Source: Paragordius varius (taxonomy: Eukaryota > Animalia > Nematomorpha). From it: a DNA stretch of 64,000 nt. The stretch spans positions 3,596,001 to 3,660,000 of the forward strand of contig OZ176050.1 of assembly GCA_964247055.1 (NCBI GenBank). Direction: 5' to 3'. Below the pieces are notes generated by a model. It was not told the DNA's origin, did not search any database, and saw only the letters and a program-made list of their open reading frames with translations. Shown here piece after piece: positions 2,819 to 27,900 of the stretch; positions within the stretch are counted from its first letter, which is position 1, and every line of letters begins with the position of its first letter. The translations under genes and the position numbers were made by a program.

Positions 2819-5791
2819 ATGTCAGCCCAAAACTTATATAAATCTGGAGAAGACGACACCTGGGATGATACTTTATTAATCCAAGCCTGGAATGAAAGCT
2901 GGATTAAAATGAAAGTTAAATTTTTTATATAATATGTAGAAATCATTACCCAAAAATGTTAATATACCACTAATATCCCAAAACTCTAAGACCAGACGGT
3001 CAACAAAAACAAAGATAAAATGGCAAGTTGACGATATCTGCTATGCAATTTGGGATGAAGATGGAGAAGAATACATGGCTAAAATAATTGAAATCGATGA
3101 AAAAAATGATTTATACAAAGTCTTTTTTATGGATTATGGTCATGATGGTGATGTTTCGTACAAAGATTTAAGAAAAGTATTTTCAATTTGCACGCATATT
3201 ATCTAAATCCAAAAAATTGTGTGTTTATCTTAAACCCTTTTCTACAAATCAAGTTGTATAATTGATTTTAATCTATATTTATTCTCCATTATGAATTTTA
3301 TTAAAAATATAGATTTCTTCTTTATTGTGTTTTGGTCAATCAGATTCTAATTTTGACTAAAATAAATTTATGACTTTCCTTTTAATAATTTAAAAATGCA
3401 ACAACATATATATATCGATAAGAAAAATAATATTTAGAATAATAACTGAGTTTTCAAATTTAAAGTTCTTTTAGTAACAAAACAACTGACAAATGCTGGT
3501 TTTTTTAATGTCATATATAGTTGGGTGTTTAAAAAACCGATTATGCCACCATTATATTTAACCCTTTTCTTTATCAAATTATATGTGTAATGTAATACCT
3601 AGATCACAAAACATGAGAATGAAAACAATCATTTTTCCGACGGTGATCCAATTAGTGAACAAATGCCTACTAAAAATGAAAGCAACCCTTCTTCATCTTG
3701 TATATCTTTGCATGTGGCAGATTCTAACACAAATCTTACAACGATGAATGGAGAAACATGCTGCTTGACATCTAAAGAATCAAATGCAGTCACAAACGGA
3801 TTGTCAATACAAAATGGTTTGCAATGATTTTAGATTTAAAATTTCTTAGAAAAAATTAGATTGATAATAGCATGTGAGATTTTAATAATTTTTTAACCAT
3901 AAAAATGTGAGAATGTTTTAATATCTATCATTTTTAAAATCTAAGTAAGGGATACTGTTAAAACTCACAAGTTTTTAGTGTTGCTCAAATAAAATAAAAC
4001 GATGACAGCAAAATAATAATAATTTACTCGCGCTTTCCATGATGCGATGTTGAATTCTTGTACCTATTATATGCTTTTAAGCTATATTTATTAATGTATT
4101 CAATTAACTTAAAGCAATTAAAAATAAAAAAATAGGCAATTTAAAGGTAATCCAATTTAAAATCGATAGGATTTGGATCAACAAATTTTGTAAAAAAACA
4201 TTTTCCCTACGCCGAAGATGAAAACTAATACTCTGATCCAATATATAATTAATTTCTCTATGTTGGCTTTAACATGGTAAAAAATTGGGGCCGTTTAAAC
4301 AGCATTTTTGACACAAAATATATGCATGCTTTTGAATTTTGAATAAGGATAATTAAAATCATTAAAAAAAACTTTTGGATAGAAAATATTTAATTTGTCA
4401 TTCAGCAGGGTGCTGCGATTAATGCTAGACACATGGAAGAGATATAAGCTGGAATGTTTAAGAAAATTTATCGCGCATTTTTAGCCGTTTTCTGTTTAAG
4501 AAAAATGGCCCATTATTACAGTTTAGTTTGAAACTTTTTAACATTAAATAAACGATAATATGTTTATATATTTTTGTTAGGGATCATGAACGCACCATTC
4601 TGATGTATAAGGAATATGTATATATTATTGGTAGAATTTGAACATTTATTTTAAGAATCGAAATATATGCAAGGATACAACATGCTATTATAATAAATTT
4701 TTATATAATCACAATTTATTTTTATTTCCGTATCAGCTATTAGATGACTTTTCAAGGCATTTTAAAATTTTCCCATATAAATTATTTGTTTTTTTAACAT
4801 AGGCGAAATAAGTATGACAGAATCAAATTTGAATTCTTACGCATCTGAAACCGAAGATACTGGGCTTGCAAATCACATTCCTGGATTGCCTACTCAAATT
4901 CAGGAGCTTTTTAACGATGAAAAAAATATTCACAAATTAAAGGTAATTATGAAATTATATGTAATCATTTATTGTTTACTATTTGGTTTATTACATAACC
5001 TTTTTAATGTTAATAACCCTCATTTCTTAATCCATCTCTAGCATTTATTACAAAATTCTGGTCCATCACAAAATTTATCACCCAATACCTCTATGGAAAA
5101 CTTGGGAAATAAAACTACTCAATCATCATCATCATTTATTGCTCCCAATATTGAGAATATGGGTTTTCCCTTAAATCCCATGAGCCTTTTTGCACATCAG
5201 CCACAATCAAACAACCCTAATGATTTTGGTATGCAGATGCCTGTTACAAATTTCCCTTTTATTAGCATGAATGAACAATCTAATTTTGTAAGAAATTCAT
5301 TAAATACGTCTTTGGGCTCTTCTCCAATTTGTGACGAGAACGAAGCATTGGCCCAAGTATTGATGTGTTGGTACAGAGCCGGATACATGACCGGATATTA
5401 TCAGGTATAAAGAGTTTAATATTTTTTAAACAAGTTTTGTTTGCGATTAATTAGATCTAGAGAGATTATTTGGTTGAATATCTCAATTGCCTGAAACAAA
5501 TTTTTGCTCAGTTCTTAAAACAATTAATGAATAATCAAATTTGTTATATGCCATTTAGGGGTTTTAATTTATTAATATTAATAGTTTTTAATAAGTTCTA
5601 ATTATTTGACAATTTTCTTTATTGTCCACCACATATTCTAAATGTTAATTGATATTATTTAGAAGCATTTCAACAGTTTGCTCACAAAGAATGCTCCAAA
5701 TTCGGCAGATAATCATATTGAAAGCGGCAAGAAGGATAATTTCAAAAATCCTAATAAAAAGAAAAAATGCAAAAAGCACATGATTAAATAA
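2819..5791 (+). CDS. SMN: Survival motor neuron protein. Inferred exons: 2819-2914, 2940 (or 2991)-3176, 3603-3816, 4803-4942, 5042-5404, 5663-5791
   Basis: All three SMN hallmarks appear in order. The Gemin2-binding motif is DDTWDDTLLIQAW. The Tudor domain reads KWQVDDICYAIWDEDGEEYMAKI...YKVFFMDYGH. The YG box is ALAQVLMCWYRAGYMTGYYQ. The GT-AG junctions are phase-compatible and AATAAA lies at 5888-5893. Confidence 0.93.
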
Positions 5792-5971
5792 AATATCTAT
5801 AATCAATATTCTTTTTACTTTAGGACTATTGTAAACTTGGTTTTTTAATTTGTTTGATGTAATATGTTTTATGTAGTTTTGTAAAAAAATAAATAAATAA
5901 TTGGTATTTTTACTTTACTTTAATTATTTGTTCTTTGTTCTAGAATACATTGTTTTTCAATCTGTACAACT

Positions 5972-8900
5972 ATGTTAGATTTTAGTGATATAAATCATAC
6001 CATAATATATGATGCAATCATACAAGAATTGGATTCAACCATTCCCGAAGCTACATTTTGTCTTATCCGGAATTACTTTAATCGACAAATTATTTATCGT
6101 TTTAATGCAAAACCATCGTTTTATTTGTTCAAACCGTTAAATTTTATACGTACATTTTGTGTCTTTTTTTCGACTTCTCTTTACTTTGATGTCGTTAGGG
6201 CTTTTATTATACTTTATCATTTATTGGTTATGATTATCCCCTATCCTCTTTACACTGACATATTTATCACATTATTTTATTACGTGGAATTTCTTGTTTT
6301 AGTTATTGCACAGGGATTTATGATTGGCCCATACACCTATTTACATAACGGTATTAATGTCATTGATTTCATTTATCTGGTCGTTTCATCCGTCTTCATA
6401 TATTTTAGCATTCGGTTACAATGCATTTATCTGCGCATATTTCGGCTCGGTGAAATTATGATTTATCTATCATCCAGGTATCGTATCCTCTTGTGCACTT
6501 TGGTCCGGGCCTGGCAAAATATACTTGTGGTCGTAGGCGCCATAGCCTTTTCCATATTTGTGTATGCCAACGTTGGCCTTAAATCTTTCAAGGGGAGTTT
6601 AGCTAGACACTGTCGTTTAAATCCTGAGGTGGATATTTTTCCTTCTCATTTGGTGCCTCTACGGAGAGATTATTTTGTTTATCATGAGAAACGATTTGCT
6701 TGTCAAAGTTCCCTAGAATGCCCCCCTAATTACATTTGTGCCCGTGAACGGCAAAGAGAAAGATTATACTTTACGTTTGATAACATCTTTTACTCTGGGC
6801 TCAATATATTACGCGTTATTATATTGGATGATTTTGAGGATGTGTATGAAAAGTTATTGGATCACATACCGGCTCTCTTAGTTATATCCTTTTTTGTACC
6901 TATCATATTTTTCGGGAGCCTTATCTTATATAGCACTTTACTAAGTGTTGTAATTACGACAAGCTATGATTTGGAACTTAAAATTGATATTGACATTGCA
7001 AATCGCACTGGTCTTTACCAACGACCCATTAAACTAAGTGCCAACCGGAAAGCTTCAAAATTTATTTTTGTTTTAGAACCATTGGTCCAGAAATCAAAGA
7101 TTGTTTTTCAACATTATCACCCTGGGTTACGCGCCAAAAATAAAACAGATGAAAAATTTTGGAAAGCATATTGGAAAACGATTGATAAGAAATGTGTCCA
7201 ACCATGTCTACTCGATAAAATTGGTTACCAAATGAAATTGAATCATAGTAGGAAATCCATAAATGATCAGCAACAACATGGCTTACAGAATGTGGTTTGG
7301 GATGATTTGATTCGCAAGGTTCCTGTGCACACACAAGAAGAAATCGATCTTAGCACGAATGCACATCAGATTGTTCCCGGTGGTCGCCTATTCGAAGGGG
7401 ATAAAAGAGGCAGTTTTTTTACACAAAATTGGATTCCACCCGATGAATACTTACATGAGCCATTAGAAATAAAACGGCCCAAAAATAATTTTATTTTGTT
7501 GCTTAAACGGATCAAAAATAGCAGATTATACTGTCAATTGATAAATATTTGTATTTTGATTAACGCTGTAATCATACTCAGCGATCATTACCCGGAGTCG
7601 AATGAACTTGATTTGGTACAAAAGTATGCAGACGGTATATTTAATGCCATATTTACCTTCGATTTTTTGTTAGCTAAAATTATTAATCCTCGTTGGGAGG
7701 GACTGAACGATGCTTCCGAAATTATTTTGAATGTGGCAGGTTGGATAGAGGTTATTGTCTATTTGGCTTATGATGCTCAAAAATTAACTTTAGAAGTATC
7801 CAGCATGTTGGATGTAATTAAGAGTTTAAAACTTGTACGTATCGTAAAATTACCCATTATAAATAAATTGACCAATAAACTCGGTGATTTTATGATAACA
7901 ATAGTTGTATACTTTTCAATCCTTTTCCTCCTACTGTATACTTGGTCCGTGATTGGATATCAACTTTTCTCGCCATATTACAGGGATGTCCCACGCCTAC
8001 AAAATCCATTTTATGACGTTTCTAAAGCCATAGTAATTAACATTATGATATTATGTGGCCAAATTTATAAGCCTATACAACAGTGTTTGGCCGACACGAA
8101 TGCACCAACAAGTTTATGCATGACTTATTTCTTAAGCGGTGTCCCCATTTTTGCTGTAATGGTGTTTATGTTTGAAGGCGTTTTGTTCCATTCAATGGCC
8201 ACTACCATTAAAATTAATGAGCCTATAATTTCTTTAGTTCCGATTCGTAGATATCTACAAAAATCATGGCTATATCAATGGTTTAATAGCATTAGGCAAA
8301 GGCTAAGCCCCTTTAGTACAAAAAATTATTCTAATAATTCCAGATCATCATTGTCTACTAATAACGATGCGTATTCTCTTAAACTGATTACAATTTTAAG
8401 CATAATATCATCTTGCACTATTATATTGTACGAAGATATATATTCGGATACATCAGTTTACCGAAAGCTATGTCTGAAAATTAATGAATGTCTCATTTGT
8501 ATACAAATAATTTTTGAATTTATTGGCGCGATATATGCTAAAAAACGATGGTACCCCGGCAATCTACGAAATTGCAACACTATTTATATCCTTCTATTAA
8601 TATGCATATTTTTCATATCATTTGCAGTACCGATACAATTTCAACCCGTAAAATTGCGGAGATTTTTCTTTTTTACCCGTCTCATGACACTCTTAATATA
8701 TTTCCCTCAAACAGCCATCATTACTGAAACGTTTATTAAAACCTTAACTGCCCTATTCAATAGTTTCATTTTGTGCCTTGTCATATGGCTGATATTTGCA
8801 TCTATTGGTGTTTCCTTGCTCAAGGGAATGAGCTATGAATGCCTTAAAGACGGTCATGAAATTAATTTGGATCGCAGTAGATGTGTGGCTCGTGGTTTTG

Positions 8901-10543
8901 TTTGGCAAAGACGTTATGCCAATTTTGACAATATTTTCCGCACTTTGGATTCATTGGAACATTTAACTCTGTATCAAGATATGGAAGGGATTATATTAGC
9001 AGGTATTAGGTCTCAGGGTATGGATATGGGTAGTCGCGGAGAACCCCGATTAACGGTAACCATTTATTTCATGATGTTTTTGATTGGTGGATCACTCTTC
9101 TTATTCACACTGTTTATTGGTGTCATTTTTGACACGTTTAAAGAAATGGAATCTGAGAAACAGCAAAGCATTGATACCATTTTGGTGAACAAAACATCCA
9201 ACACGTATTGGAACAAATTGAAACAACTCATATCCCGATCATTGTACCAAAGTTTACAAAGGCCAAAAGATGATATACTTAGAGTGCTATATCAAATTAA
9301 TTTGTCCGACCATTATGCCATATTTTGTCACACCATCGTTCTCTTAAATGTTATATTTATGTCATTCGATTCTTATGAACTTAGTAAACAGGGTGTCGAT
9401 ATGTTGGAGGTTAGTGATCTCATCTTTTTCACATTTTTTACCATGGAATTTTTGGTAAAGGTTGTTGTGCAAAAATGGTTGTATTTTATAAAACCCTATA
9501 ATGTTTGCAATTTCATCGCCGTATTACTTATGATGATTGGTTTGCTAGCTCCAAGGCATAAGGTTTTAATGCCATACATGTTTCACATTATATTGATTGG
9601 GCGAACCATTCAATCCGTTAGAATTTTTGAAATTTTCCCTCGCATCCGTAAAATTATAAATGTGGTCGTTTCTGCAGGACCGGCCCTGTTTGCTCTCATA
9701 GTGGCACATTGCTTACTCATAACTGTTTATGCATGTGTTGGAACGCTCTACTTTCATGATGATTTAAGCCAAAGTTTCATTTACAATCACCATTTTAACT
9801 TCAAAAGCTTAACACATTCATGGGCAACTCTTTTGTTACTGACCACACGTACACGTGTTCACGAAATCGAACTTAGTCTCGTGGATCATGGTAATCCCAT
9901 AAGTTTAAAGATCATAACACCCACCCTCTCCGACAATTCCAAGAGTTATTACTATGGAAAACATGCTAATTTATCATCGTCTGCCATAGCATGGTATGTA
10001 AACACATTTATGCTTTTCAATTTGTTTGCCAGCATGTTGTATCAAGCAATCATGGCCGAATTTTTCGGGTATGCTAATGAGGAACAAGACGAGGAACTAG
10101 ATCAGCTAACAAAGGATAGCATAATGGCGTATATCGTTTCTTGGGACGAAATAACCGACGGTAATCCTTGGCTTAACGTTAAAATGATTAACGAAATTTT
10201 GTTGTGTTTACCCCAACCATTTAAGAGTCTGATTGTCGGCTCCTATTCCAATTTTTTGAATGCTTTGGATATTGGAATCTATGAAGGAAACGTGATATCC
10301 TGTGAAGAATTTTTCCACGCCTTGCTCAAAACCTATATCATGGGTGTTAAGGATTCAGATCAAAACTTATATTCCTCCCTATATTACGCAAATCATATGA
10401 AAACATTCAAACATTGCTTTGAAAAGCAATTTATTTTAATTGTGCCAAAAGTGCGAATAGCTCGTTTATCCCATTTCCATAAAGCCGTCATCACCATTCA
10501 ACAAAAATGGAAAAATTATAGACACGAAAAATATCATTATTAA
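5972..10543 (+). CDS. Intronless four-domain voltage-gated sodium channel family alpha subunit (Nav2-like, highly divergent), 1523 aa
   Basis: Single uninterrupted ORF with four 6-TM repeats. The N-terminus TFCLIRNYFNRQIIYRFNAKPSFYLFKPLNFIR is Nav-type. The P-loops begin FTFDNI, FYDVSKA, NFDNIF and NFKSLTHS. The DIII S6/linker is FTLFIGVIFDTFK...TILVNKTSNTYWNKLKQL. The C-terminus has an EF-like segment and an IQ motif, AVITIQQKWKNYR. Confidence 0.88.
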   Translation: MLDFSDINHTIIYDAIIQELDSTIPEATFCLIRNYFNRQIIYRFNAKPSFYLFKPLNFIRTFCVFFSTSLYFDVVRAFIILYHLLVMIIPYPLYTDIFITLFYYVEFLVLVIAQGFMIGPYTYLHNGINVIDFIYLVVSSVFIYFSIRLQCIYLRIFRLGEIMIYLSSRYRILLCTLVRAWQNILVVVGAIAFSIFVYANVGLKSFKGSLARHCRLNPEVDIFPSHLVPLRRDYFVYHEKRFACQSSLECPPNYICARERQRERLYFTFDNIFYSGLNILRVIILDDFEDVYEKLLDHIPALLVISFFVPIIFFGSLILYSTLLSVVITTSYDLELKIDIDIANRTGLYQRPIKLSANRKASKFIFVLEPLVQKSKIVFQHYHPGLRAKNKTDEKFWKAYWKTIDKKCVQPCLLDKIGYQMKLNHSRKSINDQQQHGLQNVVWDDLIRKVPVHTQEEIDLSTNAHQIVPGGRLFEGDKRGSFFTQNWIPPDEYLHEPLEIKRPKNNFILLLKRIKNSRLYCQLINICILINAVIILSDHYPESNELDLVQKYADGIFNAIFTFDFLLAKIINPRWEGLNDASEIILNVAGWIEVIVYLAYDAQKLTLEVSSMLDVIKSLKLVRIVKLPIINKLTNKLGDFMITIVVYFSILFLLLYTWSVIGYQLFSPYYRDVPRLQNPFYDVSKAIVINIMILCGQIYKPIQQCLADTNAPTSLCMTYFLSGVPIFAVMVFMFEGVLFHSMATTIKINEPIISLVPIRRYLQKSWLYQWFNSIRQRLSPFSTKNYSNNSRSSLSTNNDAYSLKLITILSIISSCTIILYEDIYSDTSVYRKLCLKINECLICIQIIFEFIGAIYAKKRWYPGNLRNCNTIYILLLICIFFISFAVPIQFQPVKLRRFFFFTRLMTLLIYFPQTAIITETFIKTLTALFNSFILCLVIWLIFASIGVSLLKGMSYECLKDGHEINLDRSRCVARGFVWQRRYANFDNIFRTLDSLEHLTLYQDMEGIILAGIRSQGMDMGSRGEPRLTVTIYFMMFLIGGSLFLFTLFIGVIFDTFKEMESEKQQSIDTILVNKTSNTYWNKLKQLISRSLYQSLQRPKDDILRVLYQINLSDHYAIFCHTIVLLNVIFMSFDSYELSKQGVDMLEVSDLIFFTFFTMEFLVKVVVQKWLYFIKPYNVCNFIAVLLMMIGLLAPRHKVLMPYMFHIILIGRTIQSVRIFEIFPRIRKIINVVVSAGPALFALIVAHCLLITVYACVGTLYFHDDLSQSFIYNHHFNFKSLTHSWATLLLLTTRTRVHEIELSLVDHGNPISLKIITPTLSDNSKSYYYGKHANLSSSAIAWYVNTFMLFNLFASMLYQAIMAEFFGYANEEQDEELDQLTKDSIMAYIVSWDEITDGNPWLNVKMINEILLCLPQPFKSLIVGSYSNFLNALDIGIYEGNVISCEEFFHALLKTYIMGVKDSDQNLYSSLYYANHMKTFKHCFEKQFILIVPKVRIARLSHFHKAVITIQQKWKNYRHEKYHY

Positions 10544-12116
10544 TTATCTTTTAAATAAATTTTTATAGCCATTATAATTTAACCAAACCAAACTCAACGC
10601 TTATTTTTTATTTATTGATATTTAATTATTAATTGCATGAATGTTATTTTTGCGTTCAAAAAAGCGTTGGTTTGAATAAAAAATTATCCCTAGAGCAGGG
10701 TGTCTAACACCTGGCCCTAAATTTTTTAAGCTACCCATTTGGAAAAAAATCTAAATATAAACAACATTTTATAATTTAAGAAATATTTTGGTAAAAATAT
10801 AAAATTTTTATCATTGATTTTAAAATATTATTATTAAATACTAATTTTTTCAGTAAAGGGTTATTTTAAGGTTATTAATATTTATAGCCCTTTGATTAAA
10901 TTTGTAGAGTACTATGAGTGCCTTAAAAATAATTTTTTAACCGTAAAATAACAAGATTCAAAATTTATTATTGTTGATAAACTTAACTTTTTGATTTTTA
11001 AAATGTAGGCAAATATTAATAGATATTGCCAAATTTTGACAGCGCAATAAAAGAGAAATCAAATAATTTAGTAGTTATACCGTGACTGTAAATTCCATGA
11101 TTCAAATAGAAAAAATGTATTGATGTCTGTTTGATGAACTGAAGGCCCGCTAAGCCATTTGTGTTGGGCAAAAAAATTTAAAAAATCAATTTAAATTAAA
11201 GGTTAAGGGATTATATATTGAACCATTTTAAGATAATTTATTAATAATGCAGTTAATTGAAATTATGTGATGAGTTCAGTTGTAAAATTAAATTGGAAAA
11301 AATGTTAAGTTTGAATTGAGAAAGATTGGGATTATTGAATTTGGTTAAAAGTGTTGAATTTAGTTGAGAAGAGTTTAATATTATACAAAATGAACCGCAG
11401 ATAAGGTTGGTAGATTTTCGTATACAAATATTCGGTTATACTTGCAACGATTATAAATTCCTAACATTATATTTGTCCTAATAAATCAAAGAAAATATCA
11501 TAAAAATTTTATAAAATATTCTTTTTTGCTAATATAATAATTGTTTTAATATGATCTACGACAAACATCCTTTTACAAGTTTAATATTATATTTTTTTAC
11601 AAATGTATGCGATTGTTTCCATGGGGCAAATCTAGAATGTTATCGTTATTTTGGGTTTCTTAGCTTTTAAAGCTTAAAAGTATATTAGAAACATAATGAG
11701 AACAAATTAGTTGAATATTTTCTTCTCGGCAAGCATTGACACAATTATTGTAGAAATTGAAATTAAACGGACAAAACATGAAAATATTAAGACATTTATT
11801 TTCAAAATCCCTCCGATTTTCTTGATTTTTCCAAATATAATTTATTGTTTTAAATAGAAAATATAAAGTAGAGCTGTAAATTAGTAGTACCATAATCAAT
11901 AGTGTATTTTACATTTGTAATATAAATAATAATGTATAAAAAATTAAAAAGCTGTCTTTCGAAAAAAAATATTTATTAGGTTTTTCGCTTGTCATTATAT
12001 TTTCAATTTTTACTGTAATTATGATTGCTTTTTAAATGTAATTTAAATAAAATTTTTGATGAAAAAAATATTCCAGCCCTCAGTTGGTTGAGGATGAGTA
12101 TAAAAAAGCAAAAAAT

Positions 12117-24365: not shown

Positions 24366-24929
24366 ATATGGTATTTTAACAATATATGTCATTTTATATA
24401 TTTATTTGGAATATATATATTAAACCTGAGGAGTTTAATAATCAAAGATAATTATTTGTTACCAAAAACTATAGGATTACTTCCATTTTTGAAAATAACC
24501 ATTATTATTTTATCACAAAATTTGATAAATATTTTCTGCCATTAAAATTAACCATAATTTTTAACCAAAAAAATTAAAAAGTGATAAATGATGAGATCCT
24601 AGCATTGGTTTCAGTTCATTTAATTAAAGATTTAAAATAATTTTTTAAAGCACCCAATAAAGTCATATTGCTTATAACAATTTATTCAAGTAAATAGAAA
24701 TTATATTGCACTTTAAATATAAATACCAAATATCGATAAGTGTATTGCAATATAAATTATAATGTTTTATAAAAAAAGGTCCAATACAAATAAAGCTAAT
24801 TCACATTTGTTATGATATTCAAATATAGGCATTGCTAAAATATATATAAAAGTAATTTATATAACATATATGACTTAGATTATATGGTTGTTTTGTTTCA
24901 TATTATAATAAAATGTATCTTTCCAAAAC

Positions 24930-27900
24930 TTATTTTTGGGTATGCAAACCCAATCCATCATATAAAGGGATCCATGATTGATAAGGTAAAATATCAGCTG
25001 TTTTGCTTGGTGGACCCTATAAAAACAAATAAGATCTTTGTAAAATATTACAAACATTATAAAATATTTTGAATTATATCTTACTCTAATTAGTGCCGGA
25101 TGAGTAAAACATTTTTTGATAGAAGAACGTTTATTCACATCCGCAACCAATAAATGATTTATAAGGAATTCCTTGGCTTCCCAAGACATTAGGCGATAGG
25201 GACCCTTAGTGTTTTGGTAAAACTTAAAATTCTGCCAGATATGGTTGACATAAAACTCGGGATCAAATGCCATGATTCGTCCAATCATTGCACATAATTC
25301 ATGTTTATCAATATTTTGACAACTATGACTTTTGGTCGAGTTATTAATGTTTGTTTCCTCGCCCTTCTTAGTTTGCATATTTACAGAAGGGCTGGTGGTA
25401 ACATCATTTCCAACAATATTGTTAGTTTGATTATTAGAATCGTCTTCACAATATGGTGAAACAAGAGAAATGGGTGATGCAAAAGGGATATGCCCAGCGG
25501 TAAAAAGATAAAGCAAAAGAATTCCCAAACTCCAAACATCAGATTTAAGGTTTGGTTCCCCATTAGTCATGGTAACGGTTTGATTAGCGGCTGAACCGGA
25601 AAAAAGTGCAGCCGTCATGCTTAACGAAGAAATTGATGAGGGGAAGAGTGAAGGAAATATGGTTGTGGTAAGCAGGTGAGATTGCTTTATCAGCGCTTGA
25701 TGTAGCGTATCAAGGTCCTCGGTAATATATTTGGCATTTGTACCACTGCTATTACTATTAAAACTAGAGTAAGGTGTTGTGCTAGCCAACAATGTCGAAT
25801 TAAGGACCTGATCCTGACTACACCGACGAACCATCATATCTAGTTTTTCTTGAGCTTCAAAATCAATAGAATTTTCAGCATTAGTCCTGACAGAAGAGAT
25901 GATGGCTTGTTTGGATTGTAACGGCTTTCGTTGAAATGTTTTGGATATGTTCTGTTTTTCTGATGGATTTTGATCGGTAGGTGAAAGATTTAAATCTTTC
26001 GCACTTTGTTCTATATCGGTATCAACAATATTAGTAGTAAGTGATGCCTTTCGAGAATCACTACTGTCAAATGATGATATGTCCGCTTGTGCAGAGGTTG
26101 TGTCCTCAATGTAAGGATAAGATTGGAATACATAGCCCGTGTGAGATGATGTGATAGATTTGGTGACCACAGGGTTATGTTGTAAACTATAATTTGATGA
26201 ATTAAGCATGGGTAATGCATCTTGTTTAGCCGTTGTTGTTGTACTATCCAGCGCCGTATATGTGTGATCTAAACTATTTGAAGACGAGGTTGAAAGAAGC
26301 GGGTTGGAATTCGGATTATGCGCACTGGGATGTAAGACACGTTTCATAAGAATTTCCGGAGCCTGATATGCTACGTGGAATGGATTAAGGAAGATACAAG
26401 GTTTCGAAGGGGTCCCATACGATGTTAGAGGAAAATGACATGCATAAGAAAAACCAGTTAATTTAACAATACCATGTAACCGTTGATAGCGTTGTGAAGT
26501 ACCCGGGAGTGAAGAAATATTATTATTATACGTATCTCCTTTGTCGTAGTAAGAGTTGTTTGCAGGTGGAAAGACATGGTTAACAATAAATATGTTTTCA
26601 GGCTTTAATAATACAAAAATAAAATTTATAACATATGATACACAAGAATGATGTTATAAAAAATATTTTATATCAACGGGAAAAAGCAAAATTACACATA
26701 TATCCAAATGAGCAATTTTGTGTGAATGCAAATATTCTAATGCGGTGCACACTTGGTATGCTAAATCCCATACCTGTGCTTCGCTATAAGCTCCCATTGT
26801 CCTAAAATGATCGATTACATGCATGCCATTCAATCTAAATAACGCGAATATGTGCGGAAAACTTAAATTAAATCTCTGCAAAAAGTAATATGTTATTTAT
26901 GTATGACAGTATTGCCCTGGCCCAGTCACAAATTGATAAAATATATCGAATCAAAAATTTATCAAATTTAATTTTTTCTTTTACTATTTAAAGGCTAGGA
27001 AAATATTATCCTATAAAATAGTAATCGTCTGCTTATGGTTAACAGTGAAAAATTGTGGAGTTTCGGCTATTCTCACATCCAGTTTAGTGCCTTAAACATT
27101 TTATCACCACACCTGCAGTCATATAAAGCATACATTTTTATAAATGTCATTGAAAAAATCAAACTTTTCCAAGATGATAATGTATCGTCGAGGCGTGGCA
27201 TAAGCACCAAACGTTGAAACTATGTTGGGGTGTGGTTGAAGTTTTCGCAAAATTTGATATTCCGTCGTTACGGATTGATATCCCCTAACATTTCGCTCCA
27301 CGTATTTGCCAACATAAATTTTTCCAGAATATTTTGGATCCGTGATATCTACGTCCGGGTGATAATGTTTGTCACGCTTATCCAACAAGGTATATAAGCG
27401 ACAAGTTTTCCCACTAAACAGAATTTAGGAATGGATTATATATTACTCCTATAAGTATCTTTTCAAACAGATTTGAGTTTGAATGGTATAAAAAATATTC
27501 ATATAAAAGTTCCCGATTAAAATTTTTTTAATAGATATATATTGCGATAAATAAACTAACCTGTAAAGCAATTTTTGTTCCAAGTATTCATCAAAAAAAC
27601 CGGATAACCATATTTTGGGATCATCACCGGTAAAAGTTGGTATGCTAGGTAAATGTTTAAATGTTAACACATCAGTACTATCAGAGCATGAAAGATGAGA
27701 GGATGTAGGTTTAGATTGTGCTACAGTATTGGAATTGGTGAGTTTTGTACCATTTGTCATGACATTCTGATCAGGGTATGGAACTGAAACTATGTTGCTC
27801 GTTGGAAAAAGAGCCGTTTCAGGTTTTATTCTAAGGCGAAATTGGGGCGAATCTCTGAGCACCATATGTTTATCTATGATGGCAGATTGTGTACGAATCC

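What the first reader, a model, noticed from the sequence alone, without database searches (positions are those of the whole stretch)
5972..10543. Nav-family channel with a non-canonical D-Q-Q-T selectivity ring
Manual alignment of the four pore loops to the canonical Nav signatures gives the following. DI is IILDDFE (D286, 6827-6829). DII is LCGQIYK (Q697, 8060-8062). DIII is TLYQDME (Q1002, 8975-8977). DIV is TTRTRVH (T1294, 9851-9853). Known rings are DEKA (Nav1), DEEA (Nav2), DKEA (cnidarian Nav2.5), EEEE (Cav) and DENS (Nax). Here both central charged positions are Gln, the conserved P-loop Trp is missing in all four repeats, and basic residues sit nearby (K in DII, R-T-R in DIV). Despite this, a 4.5-kb ORF stays open in very AT-rich DNA and the IQ motif is kept. 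Inference: a selected but repurposed channel with altered or no ion selectivity, or a non-conducting sensor or scaffold.
Basis: partly seen in the sequence, partly recalled or inferred. Interest (0 to 1): 0.85.

Follow-up and report, generated by a model that had tools for sequence, protein, structure and literature searches.

The report
Hairworm sodium-channel relative with rebuilt pore
A hairworm genome carries an intact, selected, single-exon gene of the sodium-channel family in which nearly every residue that normally defines ion selection and voltage sensing has been replaced, a pore design not seen in any other four-domain channel examined.

Summary
Window 5972-10543 (+) is one open frame of 1523 codons with four Ion_trans repeats. 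Its best matches are Nav1.x structures (E 1e-68, against 1e-31 for Cav3).

MAFFT, three clade profile HMMs and the helix boundaries of an AlphaFold2 model all give the same gap-free register. The ring is D286/Q697/Q1002/T1294, and the four P-loop Trp are replaced by F/I/M/V.

The only close relative among 5.8 and 1.84 billion proteins is an unnamed Gordionus (Nematomorpha) protein, 51% identical. It has the same ring and no Trp either. Between the two, the pore is the most conserved part: P-loops 64-89%, S6 79-84%, 55% overall.

Of 36 listed variants in DNA runs, 25 are synonymous and 11 are not (25.2 non-synonymous expected, P<1e-5). The gene is under purifying selection.

Also replaced are all four S6 Asn and most S4 charges of repeats I, III and IV. 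Repeat II keeps K-K-R-K and the IQ motif is kept.

The pair sits on a stem of 3.4-4.9 changes per site. Nav1, Nav2 and basal placement cannot be told apart.

Most likely it is a lineage-specific Nav derivative with a weak-field cation pore and weak voltage dependence, functionally akin to Nax or NALCN. Its function and expression are untested.

The parts
5972..10543 (+). Single-exon coding sequence, 1523 aa, of a four-domain Nav-family channel; the stop TAA is at 10541-10543
6431..6454 (+). Repeat I S4 (LRIFRLGE). Only R155 and R158 are kept; the third charge position is E161 and the fourth is I164.
   Evidence: alignment; positions
6785..6865 (+). Repeat I pore loop (residues 272-298). Ring residue D286 is at 6827-6829. 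The Trp position is F288. It is 89% identical to Gordionus.
7817..7852 (+). Repeat II S4 with K617, K620, R623 and K626 at every third position. This is the only voltage sensor with a near-complete set of charges.
8018..8095 (+). Repeat II pore loop (residues 683-708). Ring residue Q697 is at 8060-8062. The Trp position is I698. The outer 'Na site' Glu is replaced by K700 (R in Gordionus). The loop has the Nav-type length and keeps LCG and the P2 Cys.
   Evidence: PMC6259924
8171..8191 (+). Repeat II S6 segment FEGVLFH (734-740), with a Glu and a His in the inner helix. It is conserved in Gordionus. The usual S6 Asn is replaced.
8648..8683 (+). Repeat III S4. K894, R897 and R903 are kept; F900 and T906 sit at charge positions.
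8933..9007 (+). Repeat III pore loop (residues 988-1012). Ring residue Q1002 is at 8975-8977, D1003 is next to it, and the Trp position is M1004.
9176..9184 (+). III-IV linker triad T1069-I1070-L1071 at the place of the MFL/IFM inactivation latch (QIL in Gordionus)
9581..9631 (+). Repeat IV S4. The charge positions read H1205, L1208, R1211, Q1214, R1217, E1220. Gordionus has the same pattern.
9809..9883 (+). Repeat IV pore loop (residues 1280-1304). Ring residue T1294 is at 9851-9853, flanked by R1293 and R1295. The Trp position is V1296.
10490..10522 (+). C-terminal IQ motif (ITIQQKWKNYR), aligned with the IQ motif of Nav1 and Nav2
10554..10559 (+). AATAAA 11 nt after the stop codon; a possible polyadenylation signal, read from the sequence only
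5093..5410 (+). Context: the upstream ORF ends with an SMN YG-box. Only about 560 nt are therefore left for the channel's promoter or any further 5' exon.

Best explanation
This is a real, functional gene of a horsehair worm (Nematomorpha). It is a lineage-specific, extremely diverged member of the Nav (Nav1/Nav2) four-domain channel family.

Shown:
- The 24-helix architecture, the pore-loop geometry, the C-terminal domain and the IQ motif are kept.
- The selectivity ring is D/Q/Q/T.
- All four P-loop Trp and all four S6 Asn are replaced.
- Voltage sensors I, III and IV have lost most gating charges; sensor II keeps four.
- The same states are fixed in a second hairworm genus.
- The gene is under purifying selection, strongest on the pore module.

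Inferred:
- After a burst of change in the hairworm stem lineage, the protein settled as a channel that still conducts.
- It conducts through a weak-field filter. One ring carboxylate (D286), helped by D287, E289, D1003 and E1005, would attract cations. K700, R1293 and R1295 would disfavour divalent ions.
- The expected result is a poorly selective monovalent-cation pathway with weak voltage dependence, driven mainly by sensor II.
- Calmodulin control through the IQ motif may be retained.
- In function it would resemble Nax or NALCN more than a spike-generating sodium channel.
For: Family: Pfam Ion_trans x4. PDB phmmer gives Nav1.8/1.7 at E 1e-68, Cav3 at 1e-31 and Cav1 at 1e-25, with no NALCN at E<=1e-5. 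The top hits among 1.84 billion representatives are DEEA- and DEKA-type channels, including Ptychodera, Chelonus 'sodium channel protein 60E-like', Macrostomum and Lineus. Foldseek's top hits are Nav1.7/1.8, TM 0.66-0.70. Repeat II has the Nav-type short pore loop with LCG and the P2 Cys.

Ring and Trp loss.

Orthologue: Gordionus P0001 is 51% identical with identical ring, Trp replacements and S4 pattern. P-loops are 64-89% identical, S6 79-84%, the whole 55% and linkers 24-47%.

Selection: of 36 listed variants in DNA contigs of 3 samples, 25 are synonymous and 11 are not, against 25.2 non-synonymous expected for the same mutation types, P<1e-5. The two listed variants inside pore loops (6817, 9850) are both synonymous.

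Model: AF2 gives pLDDT 72 and pTM 0.73, with pore-loop blocks at about 84-91 in repeats I-III and 73-86 in repeat IV.

Background: the review PMC6259924 says that reduced S4 charge marks NALCN and Cch1 and that Nax lacks voltage-sensitive gating. It also says that animal channels otherwise carry either acidic residues in repeats II and III or a Lys there.
Against: - No RNA run holds the gene, so expression is not shown.
- No electrophysiology exists.
- Loss of the Trp ring, which the review says stabilises the pore loops through inter-repeat hydrogen bonds, and of the S6 Asn could equally mean that the pore no longer opens.
- Two Arg beside T1294 could occlude the filter or invert its charge.
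- In-frame mini-introns of 22-30 nt, which earlier notes report for this genome, could hide in the linkers.
Confidence: 0.55

Rival explanations
1. It is a non-conducting sensor or scaffold. The protein keeps the Nav fold and its partners (calmodulin, cytoskeleton) but no longer passes ions, as is debated for Nax.
For: All four P-loop Trp, all four S6 Asn and both central ring charges are gone. Three voltage sensors are degraded. The IQ motif and C-terminal domain are kept.
Against: Between the two hairworm genera the P-loops (64-89%) and S6 helices (79-84%) are the best conserved parts. The C-terminal domain (35%) and the linkers (24-47%), where partners would bind, are the least conserved.
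Confidence: 0.25
2. It is a retrocopied extra paralogue. A canonical Nav1 or Nav2 still exists elsewhere in the genome, and this intronless copy is free to take a new role.
For: The whole coding sequence is one exon. By contrast, Nav1 and Nav2 genes share about twenty intron positions (PMC6259924), and other genes of this genome keep many tiny introns according to earlier notes (not checked by me).
Against: There is no poly-A tract and there are no flanking direct repeats. No other sodium-channel note exists among 1678 scanned windows of this genome, which is weak evidence. No second Gordionus protein stood near the query in the searches. This reading is compatible with the main one as far as function goes.
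Confidence: 0.15
3. It is a decaying gene or an annotation or assembly artefact.
For: It sits on a very long branch (stem 3.4-4.9 changes per site). No RNA evidence was found.
Against: The frame of 1523 codons is open in DNA of about 30% G+C. Variants show a 25:11 excess of synonymous changes, P<1e-5. The orthologue has the same unusual residues. The gene is present in contigs of 5 runs from 2 studies.
Confidence: 0.03
4. The canonical ring is there but was missed through a register error.
For: D1003 and E1005 lie one and three residues after Q1002. The posterior probability of the repeat III register is only about 0.6 against the Nav2 profile.
Against: MAFFT, the Nav1 and Cav profiles (posterior probability about 1.0) and the AF2 helix ends all give the same register. 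Repeat II has no acidic residue from I693 to A706, so no shift can supply one. No shift restores any Trp.
Confidence: 0.03

Closest known systems
Nav2 (insect DSC1/NaCP60E, BSC1; DEEA ring)
   Same: It has four repeats. It gives the highest clade-profile score: 396 bits, against 352 for Nav1 and 340 for Cav. Repeat I reads L-D as in TLDFWEDVY. Repeat II has LCG..P and the P2 Cys. An IQ motif is present. By path length in the tree, Nav2 rows are the nearest.
   Different: The ring is D/Q/Q/T instead of D/E/E/A. There is no P-loop Trp and no S6 Asn. Three voltage sensors have lost most charges. TIL stands in place of MFL. The gene has no introns. A clade with Nav2 is neither shown nor rejected (AU p 0.11).
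Nav1 (para, SCNxA; DEKA ring)
   Same: It has the best PDB sequence and fold matches. A clade with Nav1 is not rejected (AU p 0.73 and 0.29).
   Different: It lacks the repeat III Lys, lacks the Nav1-type Gln before the repeat I Asp, and lacks IFM. Everything listed under Nav2 also differs.
Nax (SCN7A), the vertebrate Nav derivative without voltage-sensitive gating
   Same: Both are Nav-derived proteins that keep the architecture but have a changed ring and degraded voltage sensing. The window matches the 7tj8 chain at E 1.6e-38. The description of Nax comes from PMC6259924.
   Different: The origin is independent: Nax is vertebrate-only. By my own knowledge Nax keeps D and E in the ring and keeps the P-loop Trp. 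Here the change is far more radical.
NALCN and fungal Cch1
   Same: Both show reduced S4 charge, and Cch1 lacks the repeat I Trp (PMC6259924).
   Different: No NALCN chain matched at E<=1e-5. NALCN rings are EEKE or EKEE. Earlier notes report a separate NALCN gene in this genome (not checked).
Other odd Nav rings seen here: amphioxus DDQA (P0011), tick DEES (P0037), Nematostella DEET (P0041), DKEA (P0052)
   Same: They are non-canonical rings within the Nav family.
   Different: All keep at least two acidic or basic ring residues in repeats II and III taken together, and at least 3 of 4 Trp.

Membership tests
Nav (Nav1/Nav2) four-domain channel family | Four Ion_trans repeats in one chain | tested here: met
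   Pfam PF00520 in 4 stretches, E 5.8e-67; AF2 model and Foldseek
Nav (Nav1/Nav2) four-domain channel family | Closer in sequence to Nav than to Cav or NALCN | tested here: met
   PDB: Nav 1e-68, Cav3 1e-31, no NALCN. Top library hits have DEEA or DEKA rings. Profile scores: Nav2 396, Nav1 352, Cav 340 bits.
Nav (Nav1/Nav2) four-domain channel family | Falls inside the Nav clade in a tree | tested here: inconclusive
   SH-aLRT is 100 and 98 for a position inside Nav. The AU test does not reject a position on the Cav-Nav branch (p 0.10). The stem is 3.4-4.9 changes per site.
Nav (Nav1/Nav2) four-domain channel family | Short repeat II pore loop (no 'Ca site' residue), with LCG and the P2 Cys | tested here: met
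   LCGQ-IYKPIQQC aligns without a gap to LCGE-WIEPLWDC, while Cav has one residue more. The definition is from PMC6259924.
Nav (Nav1/Nav2) four-domain channel family | Ring D-E-(E/K)-A or a listed variant with charge in repeats II and III | tested here: not met
   The ring is D/Q/Q/T. It lies outside the set listed in PMC6259924.
Nav (Nav1/Nav2) four-domain channel family | Trp two residues after the ring in all four repeats | tested here: not met
   The residues are F/I/M/V. This is 0 of 4 Trp, against at least 3 of 4 in the 99 other channels.
Nav (Nav1/Nav2) four-domain channel family | Arg/Lys at every third S4 position in all four sensors | tested here: not met
   Repeat I keeps 2, repeat II 4, repeat III 3 and repeat IV 2. 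Glu sits at charge positions in repeats I and IV.
Nav (Nav1/Nav2) four-domain channel family | Hydrophobic latch (IFM/MFL) in the III-IV linker | tested here: inconclusive
   TIL (QIL in Gordionus) stands at the aligned place.
Nav (Nav1/Nav2) four-domain channel family | C-terminal IQ motif | tested here: met
   IQQKWKNYR here and IQRNWRNHMKR in Gordionus, aligned with the Nav IQ motif.
Nav1 | Lys in the ring (repeat III, or II in cnidarians) and Gln before the repeat I Asp | tested here: not met
   Q1002 and L285
Nav2 | DEEA-type ring | tested here: not met
   Q697 and Q1002 stand in place of Glu. Both are CAA codons, one step from GAA.
NALCN | EEKE or EKEE ring and sequence kinship to NALCN | tested here: not met
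   No NALCN chain matched at E<=1e-5. The ring is D/Q/Q/T.

The most novel reading that the evidence does not exclude
This may be the only Nav-family gene left in the Nematoida (nematodes have none). If so, it may represent a new functional class of four-domain channel. Its filter has no charge in repeats II and III, no Trp ring, and an Arg pair in repeat IV. Its permeation or sensing properties (for example protons, anions or a ligand-sensing vestibule) might be unlike Nav, Cav, NALCN or Nax.
Probability: 0.3. Interest if true: 0.8.

Novelty: new variant of a known kind. Interest (0 to 1): 0.64.

Why it matters
The Trp ring and the charged ring of repeats II and III are treated as near-universal in four-domain channels (PMC6259924). 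Here both are abolished, yet the pore is the most conserved part of the protein, so it is a natural test of what these residues are needed for.

It also bears on the loss of sodium channels in the nematode lineage. The sister phylum kept one copy, but in a form that can hardly be a classical spike channel.

Hairworms are muscular and free-swimming as adults, so which currents drive their excitability becomes a concrete question.

Tried and rejected
- Fetching the Gordionus locus by exact protein look-up gave nothing on record. Gene structure, synteny and codon-based dN/dS against the orthologue could therefore not be done.
- The RNA search found no RNA holder. The four runs laid were DNA-like contigs that cover the flanks as well, so they say nothing on expression or splicing.
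- The AU test of a Nav2 clade on the 50-row set never finished.
- My own IQ-TREE LG+F+G4 runs did not finish. Interim lnL values were free -92167, with Nav1 -92177, with Nav2 -92193. I do not use these as a result.
- Diagnostic Nav1-versus-Nav2 columns were too few to decide: 5 columns, 1 against 2.
- On the 25-row set none of the three placements is rejected: Nav2 p 0.11, Nav1 p 0.29, Cav side p 0.10.
- No retroposition marks were found: no flanking direct repeats and no poly-A tract.
- The joint 5438>11147 in two runs rests on 21 letters only. I take it for a chance match of a contig that differs downstream of the gene.
- Literature searches on hairworm sodium channels found nothing relevant. 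The Gordionus genome paper does not mention channels.


Full report
**What is there**

Window 5972-10543 (+) is a single open frame of 1523 codons. It is the only long ORF in this stretch, in DNA of 26-35% G+C. Pfam finds the Ion_trans domain four times, E 5.8e-67. Against all PDB chains the best matches are human Nav1.8 and Nav1.7 (E about 1e-68). Then come NavPaS (3e-55), Nax (1.6e-38), Cav3 (1.6e-31) and Cav1/Cav2 (1e-25 and weaker). No NALCN chain reaches 1e-5.

An upstream ORF on the same strand ends at 5410 with an SMN YG-box. An AATAAA follows the stop codon by 11 nt. The ORF therefore probably holds the whole coding sequence. An AG at 5942-5943 leaves room for a short 5' exon, which I cannot exclude.

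**Whose gene it is**

The word-indexed search of 5.8 billion proteins returned one close relative: an 'unnamed protein product' of Gordionus sp. (Nematomorpha), 51% identical over residues 161-1520. The exhaustive HMMER search of 1.84 billion representatives returned the same protein. The next hits have only 23-25% identity.

Earlier notes of this scan call the genome hairworm-like and report introns of 22-30 nt in other genes (not checked by me). The Gordionus assembly has 26.9% G+C (bioRxiv 10.1101/2023.06.26.546503), much like this window.

**The pore register**

MAFFT on 101 full-length four-domain channels aligns all four pore loops without gaps.

| Repeat | Window | Canonical | Ring residue | Residue at Trp position |
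|---|---|---|---|---|
| I | ILDDFEDVY | TLDFWEDVY | D286 | F288 |
| II | LCGQIYKP..C | LCGEWIEP..C | Q697 | I698 |
| III | TLYQDMEG | ATFEGWME | Q1002 | M1004 |
| IV | TTRTRVHE | TSAGWNDV | T1294 | V1296 |

HMMER alignments against separate Nav2, Nav1 and Cav profiles give the same register. Posterior probability is near 1 except for repeat III against the Nav2 profile, where it is about 0.6.

An AlphaFold2 model of residues 171-1370 has pLDDT 72 and pTM 0.73, with pore-loop blocks at about 84-91 in repeats I-III and 73-86 in repeat IV. It ends P1 and starts P2 at 284/288, 694/699, 999/1004 and 1291/1296. These limits bracket the same residues. Foldseek's best matches are Nav1.7 and Nav1.8, TM 0.66-0.70.

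No shift can give repeat II an acidic residue, and no shift restores a Trp. D287 and D1003 sit next to ring residues and may take part in the filter.

**How unusual it is**

Among the 101 aligned channels, 75 have four P-loop Trp, 25 have three (one of these is a gap in the alignment rather than a substitution), and only the window and Gordionus have none.

The review PMC6259924 makes three relevant statements:
- These Trp stabilise the pore loops by inter-repeat hydrogen bonds.

D/Q/Q/T is outside that set. The domain II 'Na site' Glu is K700 here and Arg in Gordionus.

**Other hallmarks**

| Sensor | Residues at the S4 charge positions |
|---|---|
| I | R155, R158, then E161 and I164 |
| II | K617, K620, R623, K626 |
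| III | K894, R897, F900, R903, T906 |
| IV | H1205, L1208, R1211, Q1214, R1217, E1220 |

- The conserved S6 Asn is S, V, T and S in repeats I to IV.
- The S6 helix of repeat II carries FEGVLFH, with a Glu and a His.
- The MFL/IFM latch is TIL.
- The Cys pair of the repeat IV outer loop is gone.
- The IQ motif is kept.
- Gordionus shares all of these states.

**Selection**

Between the two genera the identities are as follows.

| Region | Identity |
|---|---|
| P-loops | 89, 77, 76, 64% |
| S6 helices | 79-84% |
| S4 of repeats II-IV | 52-62% |
| Linkers | 24-47% |
| C-terminal domain | 35% |
| Whole protein | 55% |

The four runs laid on the locus (three samples, two studies) are DNA-like contigs that also cover the flanks, and they differ from the window by 0-2%. 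Thirty-six of the listed differences fall inside the ORF. Of these, 25 are synonymous and 11 are not. For the same mutation types, 25.2 non-synonymous changes are expected, P<1e-5, and pN/pS is about 0.12. Only the best supported variants were listed by the tool. I see no reason why that choice should favour synonymous sites. The two that lie in pore loops (6817, 9850) are synonymous.

**Place in the family**

In a 50-row tree (LG+C20 by PMSF) the pair lies inside the Nav clade (SH-aLRT 100), on a stem of 3.36 changes per site. In a 25-row tree the stem is 4.89 changes per site, with SH-aLRT 98.

Names of neighbouring rows confirm the expected clades:
- Monosiga Nav2.1 at the base.
- Nematostella next.
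- A DEEA clade with 'sodium channel protein 60E-like' of Chelonus, Ptychodera, Macrostomum and Tubulanus.
- A DEKA clade with Lineus.

AU tests reject nothing:
- With Nav1: p 0.73 and 0.29.
- With Nav2: p 0.11.
- On the Cav side of the Nav stem: p 0.10.

The tree alone therefore does not prove membership. The much better sequence scores and the Nav-type short repeat II loop do that work. Clade profiles favour Nav2: 396 and 395 bits for the window and Gordionus, against 352/323 for Nav1 and 340/299 for Cav. So do the L before the repeat I Asp and the Pro in repeat II. These may, however, be ancestral states.

**Gene structure**

Nav1 and Nav2 genes share about twenty intron positions (PMC6259924), whereas this gene is one exon. 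There is no poly-A tract and there are no flanking repeats that would mark a retrocopy. Intron loss or an old retroposition are both possible.

**Reading**

The identity as a selected, hairworm-specific Nav derivative with a rebuilt pore is well supported.

The mechanism is inference. The pore module is the most constrained part, so I favour a pore that still works. It would have a weak-field filter with one ring carboxylate, neighbouring acidic residues to attract cations, and K700, R1293 and R1295 to keep divalent ions out. The expected result is a poorly selective monovalent-cation pathway with little voltage dependence, comparable in role to Nax or NALCN. A non-conducting sensor remains a serious rival.

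Nematodes, the sister phylum, lack both Nav1 and Nav2 (PMC6259924). No paper in the library treats hairworm sodium channels.

Noticed in passing
window 10673-11146: Contigs of sample S2 (runs X3, X4) have almost no depth here. They carry 200-255 unmatched letters ending at 11144-11146. A joint 5438>11147 rests on only 21 letters. This looks like an insertion or deletion difference of about 450 nt, 130 nt downstream of the channel's stop codon; the stretch has GC-rich ends at about 10690-10720 and 11141-11170.
   Followed up: partly
window 5093-5410 (+): An ORF of 105 aa ends in an SMN YG-box (Pfam PF20635, E 3.7e-06). It is probably the last exon of an SMN-like gene just upstream of the channel.
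   Followed up: partly
window 24875-26347 (-): An ORF of 490 aa has a weak, sub-threshold match to the C-terminal half of the protein kinase domain (E 1.6e-04, 21.6 bits against a cut-off of 31.7).
   Followed up: no
P0011 (Branchiostoma 'sodium channel protein 1 brain-like'): This amphioxus Nav-family protein aligns with a D/D/Q/A ring, that is, a Gln at the repeat III position as in the hairworm protein, but it keeps all four Trp. It is conserved in 23 cluster members from several Branchiostoma species.
   Followed up: no
P0001 (Gordionus), N-terminus: The deposited Gordionus protein starts at the residue that matches window residue 161, so it lacks S1-S4 of repeat I. Whether this is an annotation gap or a real truncation could not be checked, because its DNA could not be fetched.
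   Followed up: partly
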